Of a DNA stretch of 64,000 nucleotides, positions 36,757 to 45,918 are shown one piece after another (position 1 is the first letter of the stretch; the number at the start of each line of letters is the position of its first letter). The notes under the pieces were generated by a model. That model saw only the letters and a program-made list of their open reading frames with translations, was not told the origin of the DNA and did not search any database. Origin of the DNA: Dimorphilus gyrociliatus (taxonomy: Eukaryota > Animalia > Annelida); contig CAJFCJ010000001.1 in assembly GCA_904063045.1 (NCBI GenBank), positions 2,852,001-2,916,000 on the forward strand, read 5' to 3'. Both the position numbers and the translations under genes were made by a program.

Positions 36757-37883
36757 ATGGTAATTGTAGCTAGAGTTGAACGCTTTTTCACTAGAAAATT
36801 GACAATGAAAGCTCTATTTATTTTATATATCGCATCCACTTTTCTTGGGTTATTTTGGATAGGATTTAACTTTAGTAAGTTAATTTTCAGAAATCATTTT
36901 ATTCATATTTGAACTTTATATCAATACTATTTTTTATTAAATAGATAATAACGTACCTCAAAACTCTTCAAAAGAGGATATAGCCTTCCTAACTAAACGT
37001 TTAATAGAATTAGAAAAGAGTGAAGAACACCTTAAATCACTGATAAAATCAAAAGAGACAAACAATGAGGATTTACCAATCATATTTGTAGTAACACCTA
37101 CTCATAGTAGACTTGAACAAAAAGCTGAACTAACCAGACTTTGCCAATGCTTTATGCACGTGCCAAAACTGCATTGGATTGTTGTAGAGGATAGGGAATC
37201 TAGAAGTAGACTCGTTGAAAATTTCCTTTCAAAGTGTAAAGTTGTCTCAAGTCATTTATTCGTCAAAACTCCAGATGAAAGTGTTCTAAAAGCAAATGAA
37301 TCGAGGTGGAAAAAACCAAGAGGCGTTCAACAACGAAATGTAGCTTTAAGCTATTTAAGATTCGAACATTCCAGATCGAAGGGTGTTGTATTTTTTGCCG
37401 ATGACGATAACGTATACGACCTTGAATTATTTAATGAAATGAGACACACTCAGAAGGCTAGTGTATGGCCGGTTGGTTTGGTTGGAAAATTAAAGTACGA
37501 AACACCAGTATTGGACTCTCAAGGAAAGGTTATTTTTTGGAGAACTGCCTGGAAAGGTACTAGAAAATTTGCTCTAGATATGGCAGGATTTGCCGTTAAC
37601 CTAAAATTGATAACTGATAGTCCAAAAGTTCAATTTAGATCTGGTCGCTCAATTGGAATGTTGGAAACAAATTTTTTGTCAGATTTAAATTTGGAATTAT
37701 CAGATCTAGAACCAAAAGCTAATGGTTGTACTCAGGTATTTAAAAATAAATTATAACTTTATCTTTAATTAACAAAATTTTCTCAAAAAAAAGGTCCTTG
37801 TTTGGCACACAAGAACGGAAAAACCGGTTATAAAAAATGAAGGCAAAATGTTAAAAATTCCAGTAGATCAGAGAGAAGTGTAA
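36757..37883 (+). CDS. B3GAT3: Galactosylgalactosylxylosylprotein 3-beta-glucuronosyltransferase (GT43)
   Basis: Type II TM anchor exon; [69 protein letters not shown]. Could be a co-orthologue of B3GAT1/2/3. Confidence 0.9.
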
Positions 37884-38565: not shown

Positions 38566-41326
38566 TTAAGCATAAACTATTTCGTTCGGCAACAAAACTT
38601 GAATAATATCCGTAAGAGCGTTCTGACTGGTATTATTTATCAAAGAACTGTTCCAAACTTCTGTAAATGAGTCTCTTAAACTTAGAAATCTATTAGCCAG
38701 ATCAGTCTTAGTAGTAGCTGTTAAATTACTAACTCCAACATTAACAACTGAACAACCAGTTCCACTAGATGGCTTTCTTCCGGCCGATATTAACGATCTA
38801 CATAAACGACAGGCGGCCAATACAGAGTCGTGAGATATTTGCGCTTGTTGTAATATCAGTTCTTGCTTGTAGCAATGAAGTTGGCAAGTTTGCAAATTAG
38901 ATTCGGATGCTCGTAGTTTCTTGAATGATTTCTTTAAAAGGCATACAAAATAAAAGTTAATAAATGGTCGGTTGTAGTATAAAAACATATACAAACGTTT
39001 AAAAGTTCAACTGGAATTTTATCAATATCAATTTCATCTGGATGTATCATTAGTTCGAATAGTATGCTTCCTTTATCGTTTGGTAGATTCGAATCACCGT
39101 GCACAGCTTTATCAATAAGGGATTCAGCTTCCGATATTTCAACAAGCACTTGAGCAAATTTACCATTCACGTCCTCAAAAACATATTGATTTAGTATAAA
39201 TGGTAGATTTGCTTTCAATAAATCCAAATCAACATCGGCATTCCACGAAAGGCCGGCAGATAATACGAATCCAGGCCAACTGAACACATTTGGCGTTAAT
39301 AATTTTTGCCCTGACCAATGACATACTATTGAACCAAGTGCTCCATTTGAATATCCTGCTTTTACACTTTCATGTATATTCGTTGCAGCTGCATCCACAT
39401 TGGCTGTACAACTATTCCAAGCAGCTGTTCCATTAAGAATATAAAAAGCTACACCGCTTCTTAGATAGGAATCACATAGATCTCCAAATGGATATTCCGT
39501 ATTAAAACCGTATTCTGCTAATGCAGTATTTGGTGGCAGTTGTTGTAAAATTTCTAATCCACTATCTCTTAGCACGTACGCGCAAATAGACAAAATTTGA
39601 TTTTCTCCAACTGATACATAAGATCTAGCCTCGTCCATGCAAAGTACATCATTTTCAATACGAACTATTAATGTAGTTAAACGTGGCCCGATATGCACAA
39701 TATTACTTCCACTACAAACCGATACAAATGATGAAAATGACGTTTGCAAATTTGTAAGATTTTCAAACGTAACTGATGAATCAACGTCTAAAACTGGTAC
39801 AAGTGTCATAAAATTCCTATAACATTCGCTATTTAATTCCGTTAATTCTCTGTTTAATAAAACAACGATATTAATTATGGTATTTATTAATTAATTCTAT
39901 AATACTAACTGTTTTGTATATGGAAGTTGCCATGTTTCCCTATCATTCTCCCTATTTTGAAATCGGAAATATAAAAGTAAACGATTGACTTTCATAAATG
40001 CCAGTATTTTAATGTTACATAATAGAATATCTAATCTAGGAGCCTCTTTTGTTATATCAACAAGTACACCGCGTTCGTTTAATGATGGAAAATCGTGAAT
40101 TTGTAAGCAAGGTAAATTATCATTCTGATAAATCATTAATAGTTGAGTGAATGTTGTTAGACAATAAAATAGTCCAGTCAAGTCCGATGAACATAATCGA
40201 ATTGAATTTGTAAATATTGATAATCGATAACTGCTTGCTTGACTAAATAATTTGTCGTTTACTTCGCAAATAACACCAATATTGCTGGAATTTTTTAAAT
40301 AGCCAATTTCTAATTGAATATTTATACCTAAATTTTGAATATCAGGTATTAAATCATTCCATAACTGAATTATTTCATTTGTTTTATCACTATTCGGTGA
40401 TATATGGACAACTAATTGTGATCCTAATTTTATAAATTCATCCTGATGTAGTAGCATTCTTGGTAAAGGCCATAACAAACTAAGTTTCTTATGGGAAAGT
40501 GGATCAAAATTTTCATCTACTTCTAATCCATTTTTTACAATTACCGATGAACAATCGGATGCATCAGTCCCATTGTCAGTAAGTAATGATAATAGGGATA
40601 CATCTTCGGCAAGTTTCTTTACAGCGGCAGAGGAATGAGGTCCACTTTTTGGTAGAGCTTCTAAATTAGCTCCGGCTTTTAAAAGACATTGAAGAATTTC
40701 GGCATCTTTCCTTTGAACAGCTTCAAAAAGAGGTGTTCTTCCCTCTATACTACAAGCATTTACATCCGCCCCGTTTTCACACAGTAAATTAATAACATCA
40801 GCATTTCCCCATGTGGAAGCCCAATGGAGGGGCGTATTCTGAGTTGCCTCTCCATCTGAGCAGTTGACATCGACACCGGCTTTTAATAGTTGTTGAACTC
40901 TGTCAGCAGACGATTGTGCACAATAATTAAACAACTCTTGGCAGTATATTTTCTTTATTTCCTCATCGGCGATGTCAAAAGACGTTTCGCCATTTGAATT
41001 TTTCAAACTTGGATCAGAACCACAAAAGAGCAAAGCTCTTACTGTATCGGTGTGCTTAAGGCTAGTGGCCAAATGCAATAAAGTCCCGGCAGATGAACAA
41101 TTAGAATTTAATATATCTTTTAGATTGCTTTCTGTGGATTTTTCTGAAAAAACATTTCATTAGTTTTCTATAAAATACTCCTGTACACGTGTAACTTTGT
41201 CGTTAACTTTCTTGTATTGTGATAACAATATTTACCATTAAGAAGAGCTGATGTAATTGATCTAACGATATCTGTTCGATTTTGTTTTACGGCAGATAGA
41301 AGGTTTTCTACAACGTTTTCAACCAT
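38566..41326 (-). CDS. Ankyrin-repeat protein fused to a degenerate glycoside hydrolase family 20 (hexosaminidase-like) domain
   Basis: Ankyrin repeats (TLLHLAT, NTPLHWASTWGN, RTPLFEAV); GH20 N-domain SYRLSI...GLFYCLTTFTQLL; DFPSLNERGVLVD; later GTAAWNS, GALGSIVCHW, AGLSWN. No signal peptide. Confidence 0.85.
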
Positions 41327-42071: not shown

Positions 42072-45000
42072 TCAGCTTAACGTATGTTTAATAAAGGCCA
42101 TTCCGTGTTTTCTCAAATGCTTAGCCAACACATCTTTATCATCAAACTCCTCTTGACATTCTCTGCAAGATAGAGTTTCTTCTTTCTTCACTGACATACA
42201 CTTTTCACTCTCATTACTATCAATTAGACTAGAGATCATTTGTGGAATTTCCTCTTTTGACGTAGATTTTAGATCAATACTATCTCCAATATCATGAACA
42301 ATAAATACATGTCGCTTTAAACCCGCCACTCCAACGAAATTTAAGCCACAATAAGTACATTGAACAACATGATCAATTGTTTGAACAGCATGCTTCCTTA
42401 TATGAATAATAAAATCCTCTGAATTTTTCGTTTCAAATGAGCATCTTGCGCAAATTCTTTTACCTTTTGAAAAAGATAAAAGTCGAACATCATTTGCTGA
42501 TAAACTGGTTGACAAATCTTCTTTGCCATTCTCGATAAAATCCGCCAATTCCTCCTTTGTTAAATTTTTATCATGAAAAGTTAATAAATGTTGGCGAAGT
42601 TTGTCCTTTTTGGCAAATGTTTTAGATTTTCCGCAAATATTACAAATTAATTGAGTTATTTGTTGGCGAACTCTTCCCAAATGTTCAAATGATAAATGTT
42701 CATCCAAATAGTTTCTATTAGAAAATGATGAATTACATAAATGACAAATTGCTGGATAATTTTTATTGTGACATGTAGATTCGTGTTCTCCAAGTTCTCT
42801 CCAACTTAAATATTTTTCGCCACATTCAAAACATATTTTCTTACCGATTTTTTCCATGCTTGCTGTAGCCTGGGAGGAAAATAGCATTGTGTTAAAGACG
42901 CGAAATCCGTGATAATTTATAAGTTACGATTTTTATAAATAACTTTAAATTGCCACTATCGTTCGTTATATTAAATATATATTTTGTTTTATCTTTTTGG
43001 TTAAATACTTACAGGTTTATTGGTCTTTTTCTCCATTGGCTTTACTTTTAAAATCGGTTGATACGGTTGAATATCTTGAGATATTCCATCATGCTTCTCT
43101 TTCATATGAATTTTATAAGCATCATTTGTACGGAAAGCAATTAAGCAGAAATCGCATTGTTCGTGAGTAAACTCTTTTACCTTTGGATAGGTGAAAGCTT
43201 TTTCATCTTTATTTTTAGGACAAGTTGCCACGTGCTCTTTTAAGCATTTCTCATTCTGCTCAACGTAATTTGATCCGCATACTGGGCACATAAAGAGACA
43301 AAGTTGAAAATCATGTGTCTGCTTCAGATGATGACGAAAATCTTCATAGCTAAGAAAACCCTTAGGGCAAATATAGCAGGAATAAAATACAACTAAATTT
43401 TGCTTAGCATGAGTTGCCATATGCATTGTATAGGAATGACGCTGAACAAATAACTTCTTAGGACAGAAGATACAGGAATAAGCTTTAGTAGTAGATTCAA
43501 TATTCATATCTTTATGATCCTTATGGTGATTTGTCATATGCTCTGCAAATCTACTTCCGACAGGAGTTTCACCGTGAACTTTTATTGCAACCGGGCACAA
43601 TGGACATTTCCGCAAAAGGCTGTCATGATTGAAAGATAGATGATCTATATAATGAGAAAAATCGTCAAACAATGATCCACAATCTGTTAAGAGAAAAAAA
43701 AAACAATTTATAAAAACAACTTCAGTTCCAAAATTAGAAAAAACTGTACCTGGAAAATGACAAATAAATTTCATTCTTCTAGAATTGTGATGGCACGTGA
43801 GATAGTAATGTTTTGTTAATATTTCCAAATCTCGAACAATGAGACCGCATTCTGGGCAGGAAGAATATGAAGAGACATTGTCATCAATTTCCTTCTTTTC
43901 CCTTTTTCCCACGTATTGGCAGGTGTTCATATGAGCTATTAGTGCACACTTTGATCCAAACAATTGTTGACAATGGGGACACTAAAATAACAAATGAGCC
44001 ACACGTTACAAAAATGTAATAACAACTTTTAACTTTTAATGTCGTTAACTCCTCTAACAATTATAAGATTATTACCTGACTCCTTGCCTGCTCTTCTGGT
44101 TCACCTCTAAGATGGCTTTTCAAATCATCAACAGTTGCACTACAGTACAGACATTTTCCTCTAATTGATGGTTTATCCGTATTAGAGAAATAAGATATAT
44201 CTAATTTGTTGTCTTGGGAAGAAATACCACTATCTAAATGCCATTTGACTGACATTTGTAAAATTCCAGATTTCCAGTCAGTATGATGGCCCTTTAAATG
44301 AGACAATATTGAACAAACATTATGAACAATTAACATTTTGTCACAACGATGACAGATTAATCCTAATTCGAAAGAATGCTTTTCATGCTGATTTAAAGCT
44401 GATTCGTTGGTGAATCTAAAAGTACACTTTCGACAAGGTTTTGATGCTGATAAGCTACCATCGTTTTCTGGCTTTTCTCCAATTTTTTCCATATAATTAT
44501 GAAATAAAGATGTAAAATGTTCCATGTCTTTTTTTCTACTAGACTTGGGTAAATATAAACTTTCTGGTGCTACTTTACAAGGACTCTTTTTCTCCGAATC
44601 AGTCGATGCTTTCTCTAATCTTGGAGCAAGTTTTGGTTGACCTCCAGCTGCTGTTGTTGGTATTAGTAATAATTGTCTTCTCTAAAAGTTTAAGGAAATA
44701 CGTTAAATCCTGCCAAAAAACATAAATTAAAACAATTTACTGACTTGATTTGGAACATTTGTTGGACCAGGAACTAAAAGGAATTGATTTTGTACGGGAA
44801 CTTGGTTTCCAGGAAGCCTAAGCAGAGACATTCCGCTGGTGGGTAAACGATTGGGCGACTGTCCAGGTTGTTGAACTATTAAATAGGTTCCTTTATTTTG
44901 GTTGTTTAATGAATTAACTACCGAAATATTCTGGGTTTGAGGTAAAATTTGAGATACGCCACCAGATTTGGTTTTTGACTGTTCAACTCTAGCTATTTTT

Positions 45001-45257
45001 AATTTGTCAATCTTTAGTTGTTTATCTGAAGGAATCTCTGACCAATCAACATCTTCACCCTCTTGACCACTCTGATCAAAGTCCGCGGACTCGCTATCAG
45101 CCTTCCTCTTAAGAGATTTGAAAGAATCATTAGACTCATCCTCAAGAATTTCTATCCGATCATCAATAGAAGATTGACTTGAAGAGGATGAAGTTGGAAT
45201 GCTATCCAAATCGCTGCACGAATTATCGGATTCATCTTTTTTCTCATCTTCTTCCAT
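42072..45257 (-). CDS. Multi-C2H2 zinc-finger protein (ZNF532/592/687-like architecture)
   Basis: Acidic N-terminus from ATG 45257, Q/P-rich linker, more than 10 CxxC...HxxxH fingers in ORFs 44061-44525, 43001-43963 and 42072-42887; apparent 5'UTR intron about 45280-45859. Confidence 0.85.
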
Positions 45258-45918
45258 GTTTAAGACCACTCAATCTGTGAAGATTAAAATAGAAGATTCT
45301 TGTTTGAACTCTCGTAATAGATTGATATCAAGTCTATTTGAAATTATAAAATCAGCAGTTAAGCGATAATTCCAAGTTTTAAAAAGTATAACGCTAGACT
45401 TTGTCTAGAATATCGATCAATTCTTAAATTTTTTATAACAATTTTCTATTATAAGATATTAACTATATAAAAGTGTTTAGTTACCATTGGTTACAAGAGA
45501 TAATTAAGTATTCATTTAATGAATTGCATACCAAATCGGATGCTTTACAAATCCTTTTCAGTCTATGTAAACAATTGGTTTGTAGTATATATTGCAATGG
45601 AGATGACACTACCAGTAGTTTATCGATTTCCGTCAATAATAATAAAAGTGAATTTTTTACGGTATCTTAGTATTTCACATTTGTATACATTGATGCTAAC
45701 AGTAATTTTCTCAGAGTCGCATCCACTGGTAGGCCGATGAGAATATTTACTTTCAATTTCTATCGAAAAAATTCTTAAAATCAAATTTATCGATATTTTA
45801 GATAATAGAATATTCTATATTCAATTATTTATGTACAAATTGAATATCTGGTAAAATACCGCTTTTAGTTCCAGCAGAAGCAGCGTAGAACTTCGAGAAA
45901 AAACGTTGTTTTAGGATG

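What the first reader, a model, noticed from the sequence alone, without database searches (positions are those of the whole stretch)
38566..41326. Cytosolic ankyrin-GH20 pseudoenzyme
The GH20 catalytic motif HxGxDE is replaced by HIGPRL (39695-39678). The substrate-binding D-x-x-R reads DITK, and the PNxNSxGH segment reads PVLDV. Yet the barrel scaffold motifs are retained (GTAAWNS, GALGSIVCHW, AGLSWN) and resemble bacterial GcnA-like GH20s more than lysosomal Hex. With N-terminal ankyrin repeats and no signal peptide, it looks like a catalytically dead scaffold or O-GlcNAc/HexNAc sensor. The region also has unusually few introns for this genome.
Basis: partly seen in the sequence, partly recalled or inferred. 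Interest (0 to 1): 0.7.

Follow-up and report, generated by a model that had tools for sequence, protein, structure and literature searches.

The report
Dead ankyrin-hexosaminidase-like protein, conserved in animals
This is an intact, well-conserved four-exon gene for a cytosolic protein that joins ankyrin repeats to a sugar-cleaving (GH20 hexosaminidase) fold that has lost its catalytic residues; it belongs to an uncharacterised family found across animals, whose choanoflagellate relatives still have the complete active site.

Summary
A minus-strand gene (41326-38566, four exons, GT-AG introns of 92, 60 and 65 nt, 847 codons) encodes ankyrin repeats, a GH20b N-domain (Pfam 2.9e-9), a divergent (beta/alpha)8 barrel and a C-terminal helical domain. 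No signal peptide or membrane segment is apparent.

- **Pfam:** it does not recognise the barrel in the window's exon pieces.
- **Relatives:** a phmmer search of exon 3 finds about 35 animal proteins of 830-1000 aa with the same architecture. These come from nemerteans, annelids, molluscs, priapulids, arthropods, echinoderms, hemichordates and corals, and all are unnamed. Bona fide bacterial GH20 enzymes follow.
- **Homology:** animal and bacterial profiles align at E 1.6e-86. AlphaFold models best match GcnA and GH20C.
- **Active site:** the catalytic G-x-D-E reads G-P-R-L (HIGPRL, 39695-39678). Of 11 conserved active-site positions, the window keeps two tryptophans.
- **History:** choanoflagellate proteins with the same architecture keep every motif. 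A coral keeps the Asp but not the Glu.
- **Selection:** a syntenic orthologue in a sister species gives dN/dS of about 0.04-0.14.

It is a conserved pseudoenzyme, not a pseudogene. A canonical HexNAc-sensor role is unlikely. The "few introns" remark is not supported locally. I found no description of the family in the searched literature.

The parts
41236..41326 (-). Exon 1: start codon and the first 30 codons. This hydrophilic N-terminal helix (motif RTDIVRSI) is conserved across the animal family.
   Evidence: ATG preceded by an in-frame stop, donor GTAAAT; the N-terminus aligns with the N-termini of P0004, P0006, P0009, P0012 and others; 26 of the 28 aligned residues are identical in the sister species.
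39910..41143 (-). Exon 2 (1234 nt): ankyrin repeats, GH20b N-domain, and the first strands of the barrel (RGVLVDITK...).
   Evidence: Ank 5.6e-24, Ank_2 1.7e-19, Glyco_hydro_20b 2.9e-9 (38.2 bits, cut-off 26.1); phmmer against PDB hits GH20 6yhh (5.5e-7) and, for the N-domain, GH84.
40632..41326 (-). Ankyrin-repeat region (spans intron 1). Pfam matches three repeat stretches; the N-terminal helix that precedes them is conserved family-wide.
   Evidence: Pfam stretches at residues 73-161 of the exon-2 piece; family N-termini.
40092..40475 (-). GH20b (zincin-like) N-domain. It begins at the family-invariant LLWP-x-P motif (40478-40461).
   Evidence: residues 223-350 of the exon-2 piece.
40047..40058 (-). 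DITK, at the position of the GH20 D-x-S-R motif. The sugar-anchoring Arg is replaced by Lys.
   Evidence: The role of this Arg (GcnA Arg95) is taken from PMC4449183.
38997..39849 (-). Exon 3 (853 nt): barrel strands beta3-beta8 and the start of the helical domain. No Pfam or NCBIfam hit.
   Evidence: no family hit; phmmer finds 752 hits, of which the roughly 35 best are animal Ank-GH20b proteins, followed by bacterial GH20. AlphaFold pLDDT 86.2, and the best PDB matches are GH20C and GcnA.
39783..39797 (-). PVLDV, replacing the P-N-Q-N-S-F-G-H loop. The invariant His and about 45 following residues are absent.
39678..39695 (-). HIGPRL at the C-terminal end of predicted strand beta4. This is the position of the GH20 catalytic (H/N)-x-G-x-D-E, with Asp replaced by Arg and Glu by Leu.
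   Evidence: The strand is at residues 50-53 of the exon-3 model. hhalign instead treats D-E plus six residues as deleted; either way the pair is absent.
39315..39587 (-). Remaining pocket motifs: ICAY for F-W-G-D, AEYGF for E-W-G-Y, GTAAWNS for G-T-S-S-W-N-S (Trp kept), CHWSG for T-D-W-G-D (Trp kept, Asp lost).
38566..38931 (-). Exon 4: the rest of the C-terminal helical domain (the counterpart of GcnA domain III) and the TAA stop. It holds the family-invariant T-x-K-T-D-L-A-N motif at 38712-38692.
   Evidence: exon 4 aligned to the family. T577, T580, D581, A583 and N584 are invariant in 17 animal sequences; hhalign runs to the C-terminus; coordinates.

Best explanation
The gene encodes a cytosolic, non-catalytic descendant of a GcnA-like GH20 beta-N-acetylhexosaminidase fused to N-terminal ankyrin repeats.

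Shown:
- The architecture is Ank, then GH20b, then a (beta/alpha)8 barrel, then a helical domain III.
- It is homologous to bacterial GH20 enzymes over all three non-ankyrin domains.
- The catalytic Asp-Glu pair, the loop His, the sugar-anchoring Arg and Asp, and two of the four pocket Trp are absent.
- All sampled animal members lack the catalytic Glu. The coral keeps more of the ancestral site than the ambulacrarians and protostomes.
- Choanoflagellate proteins with the same architecture keep every motif.
- The window's gene is intact, syntenic and under strong purifying selection in two species.

Inferred:
- The protein cannot carry out the substrate-assisted hexosaminidase reaction.
- It probably no longer holds a HexNAc in the canonical -1 subsite.
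- It most likely works as a structural or adaptor protein. The ankyrin repeats would recruit protein partners. The GH20-fold body would provide a rigid, possibly dimeric platform (domain III forms much of the dimer interface in GcnA). The remodelled pocket and the animal-specific T-x-K-T-D-L-A-N insertion in domain III would bind a partner or ligand that is still unknown.
For: Gene model and coding status:
- The gene has canonical splice sites, and the sister-species contig L001 has the same sites.
- Neighbours are syntenic: zf-C2H2 genes on one side, GT43 and seipin on the other.
- Per-exon dN/dS is 0.036, 0.135, 0.078 and 0.137, with dS of 0.9-1.7 and no gaps or stops.

Domains: Pfam finds Ank and GH20b.

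Family:
- Exon 3 hits proteins of 830-1000 aa with Ank + GH20b, at E down to 5e-58.
- They come from Tubulanus, Owenia, Nucella, Ridgeia, Saccostrea, Argonauta, Priapulus, Gryllus, Tachypleus/Limulus, Oratosquilla, Strigamia, Nymphon, Nilaparvata, Patiria, Antedon, Strongylocentrotus, Ptychodera, Saccoglossus and Pocillopora/Stylophora.

GH20 homology:
- The bacterial hits pass Pfam PF00728.
- hhalign of the animal profile against the bacterial profile gives probability 100, E 1.6e-86, 564 columns.
- The AlphaFold model of P0003:270-899 has pLDDT 89.4 and pTM 0.90, and its top Foldseek hits are GcnA and GH20C at TM 0.62-0.64.
- The model of the window's exon 3 has pLDDT 86.2 and the same top hits.

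Active-site table:
- Bacteria and the choanoflagellate-type clade keep S-R, N-Q-N-S-F-G-H, G-x-D-E-T, F-W-x-D, E-W-G-Y, S-S-W and T-D-W-G-D. One choanoflagellate-type row is missing from the N-Q-N-S-F-G-H block and another is truncated at T-D-W-G-D.
- The coral P0028 reads H-V-G-L-D-L, F-W-A-N and E-Y-G.
- Ambulacraria read G-A-T-L, G-P-Q-I or G-P-N-L, and F-C-A-N.
- Protostomes and the window read G-P-R-L.

Tree: bacteria | choanoflagellate-type | (coral-type, (Ambulacraria, Protostomia including the window)). The key branches have 100/96-100 support, and the animal and bilaterian stems are long (0.65 and 1.01).

Choanoflagellate architecture: precomputed Pfam gives Ank + GH20b + GH20 for S. 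rosetta PTSG_02041, M. brevicollis MONBRDRAFT_28983 and P0117.
Against: - No activity or binding data exist.
- The acidic residues conserved on the catalytic face (the Asp of L-D-x-S, the Asp of P-V-L-D, the Glu of E-Y-G) are shared with active GH20 families or vary within the animal family, so they do not look like a new catalytic pair. This argues from sequence only.
- Several pocket-lining positions stay conserved within the animal family (G-P-x-L, the Cys replacing the F-W-G-D Trp, G-T-x-A-W-N-S, the D-W-S-G Trp). That pattern would also fit a retained ligand-binding function rather than a purely structural one.
- The full-length fold rests on a 37%-identical homologue.
Confidence: 0.78

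Rival explanations
1. Lectin-like sensor. The dead barrel still binds GlcNAc, GalNAc or O-GlcNAc-modified proteins without cleaving them, as catalytically dead chitinase-like lectins do. The ankyrin repeats couple that recognition to partners.
For: Two pocket tryptophans (G-T-A-A-W-N-S and C-H-W) and the barrel scaffold are retained, and several pocket-lining positions are conserved within the animal family. The protein appears cytosolic, where O-GlcNAc occurs. The ancestor was a HexNAc-specific enzyme fold.
Against: The residues that anchor the sugar in GH20 are gone: the D-x-S-R Arg and the W-G-D Asp (GcnA Arg95 and Asp376; PMC4449183). The Asp that polarises the acetamido group is also gone, along with two further invariant Trp and the loop carrying the invariant His. 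Chi-lectins, by contrast, keep their sugar-binding aromatic residues (my own knowledge). The window's lineage has additionally lost the animal-invariant Arg172 and the G-C-P-E motif.
Confidence: 0.13
2. Still an enzyme. The barrel has acquired a different catalytic apparatus, for example using the animal-specific conserved Cys residues or other acids, and acts on a different substrate.
For: The family has been kept under purifying selection since at least the cnidarian-bilaterian ancestor. Nearly invariant animal-specific residues sit at predicted strand ends on the catalytic face: the Cys replacing the F-W-G-D Trp, and the Tyr of E-Y-G.
Against: No new invariant acid or nucleophile specific to the animal family was found on the catalytic face. 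The G-C-P-E Cys is not kept in the window's protein. GH20 chemistry needs the Asp-Glu pair. The long stems after the loss suggest relaxed or shifted constraint rather than refinement of a site.
Confidence: 0.06
3. Decaying pseudogene or mis-assembled ORFs: the motif losses simply reflect a gene on its way out.
For: Pfam does not recognise the catalytic domain in the exon pieces, and the window's lineage sits on a long branch (1.22).
Against: All four exons are open with canonical splice sites in two species. dN/dS is 0.04-0.14 with dS of 0.9-1.7. The same 'dead' state is conserved in many phyla. AlphaFold models are confident.
Confidence: 0.02

Closest known systems
GcnA (Streptococcus gordonii, PDB 2epk-2epo) and GH20C (S. 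pneumoniae, PDB 5a69-5ac5): three-domain GH20 beta-N-acetylhexosaminidases
   Same: Same three-domain body: GH20b, (beta/alpha)8 barrel and C-terminal helical domain III. These are the best Foldseek matches for the homologue model (TM 0.62-0.64) and for the window's exon 3. They are also the top hits, though not significant ones, for the animal-only exon-3 profile.
   Different: The window's protein lacks the catalytic Asp-Glu pair, Arg95, Asp376 and the His-bearing loop. It carries N-terminal ankyrin repeats and an animal-specific insertion with T-x-K-T-D-L-A-N in domain III. It is eukaryotic and spliced.
Bacterial ~620-aa GH20 proteins (Pfam PF02838 + PF00728), e.g. P0045-P0066
   Same: Homologous over 564 aligned columns (hhalign E 1.6e-86). 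Exon 3 alone reaches them at about 1e-15.
   Different: They keep every active-site motif and have no ankyrin repeats.
Choanoflagellate Ank-GH20 proteins (Salpingoeca rosetta PTSG_02041, Monosiga brevicollis MONBRDRAFT_28983, EukProt P0117)
   Same: Same Ank + GH20b + GH20 architecture. They form the sister clade of the animal family in the tree (100/98 support).
   Different: The active site is intact (H-V-G-L-D-E-T, N-Q-N-x-x-G-H, F-W-A-D, E-W-G-Y, T-D-W-G-D) and they pass Pfam PF00728. They are presumably active enzymes, but none has been assayed as far as I found.
Uncharacterised animal Ank-GH20b proteins (e.g. Tubulanus XP_074652559, Owenia CAH1790961, Priapulus XP_014663784, S. purpuratus LOC581115, Pocillopora XP_027042970)
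   Same: Orthologous family: same domain order, same dead motifs, and the same N-terminal and C-terminal hallmark motifs.
   Different: The window's protein is a fast-evolving member (at most 37-38% identity). It is shorter (847 aa) and has further lost the family-invariant Arg172 and the G-C-P-E motif.
Glycosidase-derived pseudoenzymes such as GH18 chitinase-like lectins (my own knowledge, not tested here)
   Same: A glycoside-hydrolase barrel kept under selection after loss of the catalytic acid.
   Different: Chi-lectins are secreted and keep their sugar-binding groove. This protein appears cytosolic, is fused to ankyrin repeats, and has lost most canonical sugar contacts.
GH84 O-GlcNAcase (BtGH84, CpNagJ)
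   Same: The N-domain is similar (phmmer 1.7e-6; profile positions 88-160).
   Different: The catalytic-domain profile matches GH20, not GH84. GH84 structures score lower and with large rmsd.

Membership tests
Glycoside hydrolase family 20 (as an evolutionary family) | GH20b (zincin-like) N-terminal domain preceding the barrel (Model A architecture; PMC4449183) | tested here: met
   Pfam PF02838 at 2.9e-9, 38.2 bits against a cut-off of 26.1, in exon 2.
Glycoside hydrolase family 20 (as an evolutionary family) | (beta/alpha)8 catalytic-domain fold homologous to PF00728 | tested here: met
   The window's exon pieces give no PF00728 hit. However, the animal-family profile aligns to bacterial PF00728 proteins at E 1.6e-86. 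The coral member passes PF00728 at 43 bits. Foldseek's top hits are GH20 structures.
Glycoside hydrolase family 20 (as an active enzyme) | Adjacent catalytic Asp-Glu at the end of beta4, (H/N)-x-G-x-D-E, needed for substrate-assisted catalysis | tested here: not met
   The window reads H-I-G-P-R-L. The pair is absent in every sampled bilaterian member, and the Glu is also absent in the coral.
Glycoside hydrolase family 20 (as an active enzyme) | Conserved -1 subsite Arg (D-x-S-R) and Asp/Glu (W-G-D), marked as conserved in PMC4449183, plus pocket tryptophans | tested here: not met
   Arg is replaced by Lys (DITK) and Asp by Gly (CHWSG). Two of the four invariant Trp are replaced (ICAY, EYG). 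The 3D positions were not checked.
GcnA-like three-domain GH20 subgroup | C-terminal helical domain III after the barrel | tested here: met
   hhalign extends to the C-terminus. Full-length structural matches to 2epk and 5a6b cover about 640 columns. The Atlas features search points to PF18088 clusters.
Ankyrin-repeat proteins | Tandem 33-residue Ank repeats | tested here: met
   PF00023 at 5.6e-24 with three stretches; PF12796 at 1.7e-19.
Animal Ank-GH20b uncharacterised family | Same domain order plus the hallmark motifs: N-terminal RTDIVRSI, LLWP-x-P, G-P-x-L, G-T-x-A-W-N-S and T-x-K-T-D-L-A-N | tested here: met
   The tree places the window within protostomes at 100/99 support.
GH84 O-GlcNAcase | GH84 catalytic barrel (Pfam NAGidase) | tested here: not met
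   No Pfam NAGidase hit. PDB profile matches to GH84 are limited to the N-domain.
HEXD/HEXDC (animal nucleocytoplasmic hexosaminidase D) | Orthology to HEXDC | not tested
HEXDC has no ankyrin repeats and is an active enzyme (my own knowledge).

The most novel reading that the evidence does not exclude
Animals converted an active ankyrin-tethered cytosolic hexosaminidase, still intact in choanoflagellates, into a pseudoenzyme at or before the cnidarian-bilaterian ancestor. The remodelled pocket (G-P-R-L, the conserved Cys, E-Y-G) and the animal-specific T-x-K-T-D-L-A-N insertion now form a new binding site. That site would regulate a cytosolic glycosylation or signalling pathway, for example by binding an active glycosidase, a transferase or a modified protein.
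Probability: 0.2. Interest if true: 0.75.

Novelty: new variant of a known kind. Interest (0 to 1): 0.55.

Why it matters
Pseudoenzymes derived from glycosidases are known, but I found no description of a GH20-derived one, nor of this ankyrin-GH20 family, in the searchable literature. Database names are 'uncharacterized protein', automatic 'beta-N-acetylhexosaminidase', or wrongly 'tankyrase'.

The family is present in cnidarians, ambulacrarians and many protostome phyla. It offers a clean natural series:
- intact in choanoflagellates;
- Glu lost but Asp kept in a coral;
- whole site dismantled in bilaterians.

This series can be used to study how an enzyme fold is repurposed near the origin of animals. 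It also flags automatic 'hexosaminidase' annotations of these genes as functionally wrong. Function remains unknown, so the biological weight is still open.

Tried and rejected
- **Family scans:** Pfam and NCBIfam on exons 3 and 4 gave no family.
- **PDB by sequence:** phmmer of exon 3 against PDB returned only a chance hit.
- **Word-index searches:** searches with exon 3 and with the GH20b part of exon 2 found only the sister species, because full-length relatives fall outside the length window.
- **Animal-only profile:** the exon-3 profile against PDB reached only E 0.19. GcnA was the top hit, but this is not significant on its own.
- **GH84 reading:** rejected, because only the N-domain matches.
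- **Pseudogene reading:** rejected by dN/dS and conserved splice sites.
- **Origin of P0117:** The look-up of encoding contigs had no record of it.
- **Earlier scan notes:** none bear on this locus.
- **Literature:** searches for the family, its locus tags, or GH20 pseudoenzymes found nothing relevant.
- Exons were handled by reference and added as separate fragments to alignments. The tree uses exon 3 only.
- **Catalytic-motif alignment:** MAFFT first misaligned the motif by a gap. Three other alignments agree that D-E is absent. They differ on whether it was substituted (R-L) or deleted with six more residues. The coral intermediate (D-L) favours substitution.
Full report
**1. What is there**

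The minus strand between 41326 and 38566 carries one gene of four exons: 41326-41236, 41143-39910, 39849-38997 and 38931-38566. All junctions are GT-AG, with introns of 92, 60 and 65 nt. The total is 2544 nt, or 847 codons plus TAA. The ATG is preceded by an in-frame stop.

- HIGPRL at 39695-39678
- DITK at 40058-40047
- PVLDV at 39797-39783
- GTAAWNS at 39431-39411
- GALGSIVCHW at 39344-39315
- AGLSWN at 39257-39240

The N-terminus is hydrophilic (maximum 19-residue hydropathy in exon 1 is 0.07). No segment reaches membrane-like hydropathy: the maximum is 1.59, in a predicted barrel element. So no signal peptide or transmembrane helix is apparent.

**2. It is a real, constrained gene**

A word-index search found only one relative of exon 3, at 79% identity, from Logan assemblies of another species. 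Its 13.8-kb contig, L001, is syntenic: zf-C2H2 genes lie upstream, and GT43 and seipin downstream. It has the same four exons with GT-AG sites at homologous positions and the same phases.

The alignments are gapless. By exon, dN/dS is 0.036, 0.135, 0.078 and 0.137, with dS of 0.9-1.7. The catalytic-site replacement is kept, reading HLGPRL. A pseudogene is excluded.

**3. Domain content**

Pfam finds ankyrin repeats (5.6e-24) and Glyco_hydro_20b (2.9e-9, above the cut-off) in exon 2. It finds nothing in exons 3 and 4, and neither does NCBIfam. The C-terminal half of exon 2 hits GH20 6yhh in PDB (5.5e-7), and hits GH84 through the shared N-domain.

**4. The family**

Because the scans left exon 3 open, I ran the exhaustive phmmer search with it. 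It returned 752 hits.
- The best ~35 hits are proteins of 830-1000 aa matched at about residues 485-790. Those scanned carry Ank + GH20b, with at most a stub of PF00728.
- Their sources are animals from many phyla. Protostomes: Tubulanus, Owenia, Nucella, Ridgeia, Saccostrea, Argonauta, Priapulus, Gryllus, Tachypleus/Limulus, Oratosquilla, Strigamia, Nymphon, Nilaparvata, Centruroides and Meganyctiphanes. Ambulacrarians: Patiria, Antedon, Strongylocentrotus, Ptychodera and Saccoglossus. Cnidarians: the corals Pocillopora and Stylophora.
- All are 'uncharacterized', or carry automatic names ('Beta-hexosaminidase bacterial type N-terminal domain-containing protein', 'beta-N-acetylhexosaminidase', 'Tankyrase').
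- Below them come bacterial proteins of ~620 aa, matched over exon-3 residues 99-245 at about 1e-15. These are bona fide GH20: PF02838 + PF00728, above cut-off.

**5. Homology to GH20, GcnA type**
- A profile of 17 animal sequences aligns to a profile of 26 bacterial ones with probability 100 and E 1.6e-86 over 564 columns. This covers the N-domain, the barrel and the C-terminal helical domain.
- A mixed profile hits GH20 structures at 2e-33. It hits GH84 only over the N-domain.
- AlphaFold on the closest full-length homologue (P0003:270-899, with the family alignment) gives pLDDT 89.4 and pTM 0.90. Its best Foldseek matches are GcnA (2epk) and S. pneumoniae GH20C (5a6b), full length, at TM 0.62-0.64.
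- The window's own exon 3, folded with an animal alignment, gives pLDDT 86.2 and the same top hits at TMq 0.55-0.64.
- The Atlas searches agree.

**6. The active site**

One search aligns bacteria, the choanoflagellate-type clade, a coral and a second coral-like sequence (source not looked up), ambulacrarians, protostomes and the window's exon fragments.

Bacterial and choanoflagellate-type sequences keep all of the following:
- D-x-S-R
- P-N-Q-N-S-F-G-H
- (N/H)-V-G-x-D-E-T
- F-W-x-D
- E-W-G-Y
- G-T-S-S-W
- T-D-W-G-D-x-G-H

The window reads, in the same order, D-I-T-K, P-V-L-D-V-D-S-S (with ~45 following residues missing), H-I-G-P-R-L, I-C-A-Y, E-Y-G-F, G-T-A-A-W and C-H-W-S-G. Of 11 positions that are invariant or nearly so in the bacterial set, the window keeps only two tryptophans.

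The alignments differ on one detail. HMMER and MAFFT align R-L onto D-E. hhalign instead deletes D-E plus six residues. The coral sequence H-V-G-L-D-L keeps the full segment, with Asp retained and Leu at the Glu position, which favours substitution. Either way the pair is absent.

In the exon-3 model, HIGPRL follows strand 50-53. This matches the beta4 C-terminal position of the GH20 catalytic pair (established knowledge of GH20).

PMC4449183 names GcnA Arg95 and Asp376 as the conserved -1 subsite residues. Both equivalents are lost here.

Acidic residues that remain conserved on the catalytic face are the Asp of L-D-x-S, the Asp of P-V-L-D and the Glu of E-Y-G. They either also occur in active families or vary within the animal family, so I see no candidate replacement pair.

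**7. Evolutionary history**

One phmmer hit, P0117 (942 aa), has Ank + GH20b + a strong PF00728 match and a perfect active site. Its closest relatives with the same architecture include Salpingoeca rosetta PTSG_02041 and Monosiga brevicollis MONBRDRAFT_28983.

A maximum-likelihood tree of the exon-3 region gives this order:
- bacteria as outgroup;
- a choanoflagellate-type clade (100/96 support);
- an animal clade (100/99), containing the coral-type sequences and the bilaterians (100/100);
- within bilaterians, ambulacrarians and protostomes (100/99);
- the window plus its sister species inside the protostomes, on a long stem (1.22).

The stems to animals (0.65) and to bilaterians (1.01) are long. 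The fusion therefore predates the choanoflagellate-animal split. The catalytic Glu was lost at or before the cnidarian-bilaterian ancestor, and the rest of the site was dismantled on the bilaterian stem.

Two caveats apply. The active-site columns were left in the tree. Only two of the seven 'choanoflagellate' rows and one of the two 'coral' rows are named by a source.

**8. What it most likely does**

Shown: it is a conserved, intact GH20-derived protein with ankyrin repeats, no secretion signal and no GH20 catalytic machinery.

Inferred: it is not a hexosaminidase, and it probably does not hold HexNAc in the canonical way. I consider an adaptor or scaffold role most likely.
- The ankyrin repeats would bind protein partners.
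- The three-domain body would act as a stable, possibly dimeric platform. In GcnA, domain III forms much of the dimer interface and reaches the partner's active site (PMC4449183).
- The most conserved animal-specific element is an insertion in domain III ending in T-x-K-T-D-L-A-N (window 38712-38692; invariant T, T, D, A, N). Together with the remodelled pocket, it is the best candidate for a new binding site.

The lectin/sensor reading, a new enzymatic activity, and a pseudogene are rivals at about 0.13, 0.06 and 0.02.

**9. Comparison with what is known, and novelty**

It is an evolutionary member of GH20 (GcnA-like, Model A plus domain III), but it fails the defining catalytic features. It is an orthologue of an unnamed animal family already present in sequence databases.

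I found no paper describing the family, its locus tags, or a GH20 pseudoenzyme. The GH20 domain-organisation paper was searched by terms only, and no returned passage mentions an ankyrin fusion. The nematode GH20 phylogeny paper has no occurrence of 'ankyrin'. I class it as a new variant of a known kind: a glycosidase-derived pseudoenzyme.

**10. Not supported or not done**
- The 'unusually few introns' remark is not supported locally and could not be tested genome-wide.
- The joined spliced protein was neither searched nor folded. All searches used exon references, and the full-length fold is that of a homologue.

Noticed in passing
P0117, P0197 (S. rosetta PTSG_02041), P0254 (M. brevicollis MONBRDRAFT_28983); Choanoflagellate-type Ank-GH20 proteins are 45-53% identical over the GH20b and catalytic region to many bacterial GH20 proteins of ~620 aa, and 42-43% identical to Promethearchaeota (Asgard) ones. 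A Physarum transcript (P0285) has the ankyrin-less form. This is high for a eukaryote-prokaryote pair, so ancient horizontal transfer or unusually slow evolution is possible. I did not analyse it.
   Followed up: no
P0028 (Pocillopora/Stylophora cluster); The coral member is an intermediate. It keeps the long loop after beta3, the Asp of the catalytic pair (H-V-G-L-D-L) and the F-W Trp, and it still passes Pfam PF00728. It has lost the Glu, the loop His and the D-x-S-R Arg. UniProt names it beta-N-acetylhexosaminidase automatically, which is probably wrong.
   Followed up: partly
window 42072-45269 (minus strand); L001:1152-3524: A run of C2H2 zinc-finger ORFs (271, 320, 154 and 180 aa) lies directly upstream of the gene. 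It is syntenic with zf-C2H2 genes in the sister-species contig.
   Followed up: no
window 37154-37756 (plus strand); L001:7562-8530: The convergent downstream neighbour encodes a GT43 glucuronyltransferase-like protein (Pfam Glyco_transf_43 on the sister-species product). A seipin-like gene follows in the sister contig. The window's ORF is only 200 aa, so the gene is probably split by at least one intron here.
   Followed up: no
window exon 3 (39411-39431 and downstream) and exon 2 (40047-40058): Compared with other protostome members, the window's lineage has lost two otherwise near-invariant animal-specific features. These are the Arg of S-x-G-R-x-P (here T-K-E-A-P-R) and the G-C-P-E motif after G-T-A-A-W-N-S (here C-T-A-N-V-D). 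The lineage also sits on a long branch (1.22). Both changes are shared with the sister species.
   Followed up: partly
GLH15836.1 (Gryllus), KAG1664104.1 (Nymphon), PFX32766.1 (Stylophora); Several family members are annotated as 'tankyrase' in public records, evidently on the strength of the ankyrin repeats alone. Among those I scanned (e.g. P0010, P0028), no PARP domain appeared in the Pfam results.
   Followed up: partly
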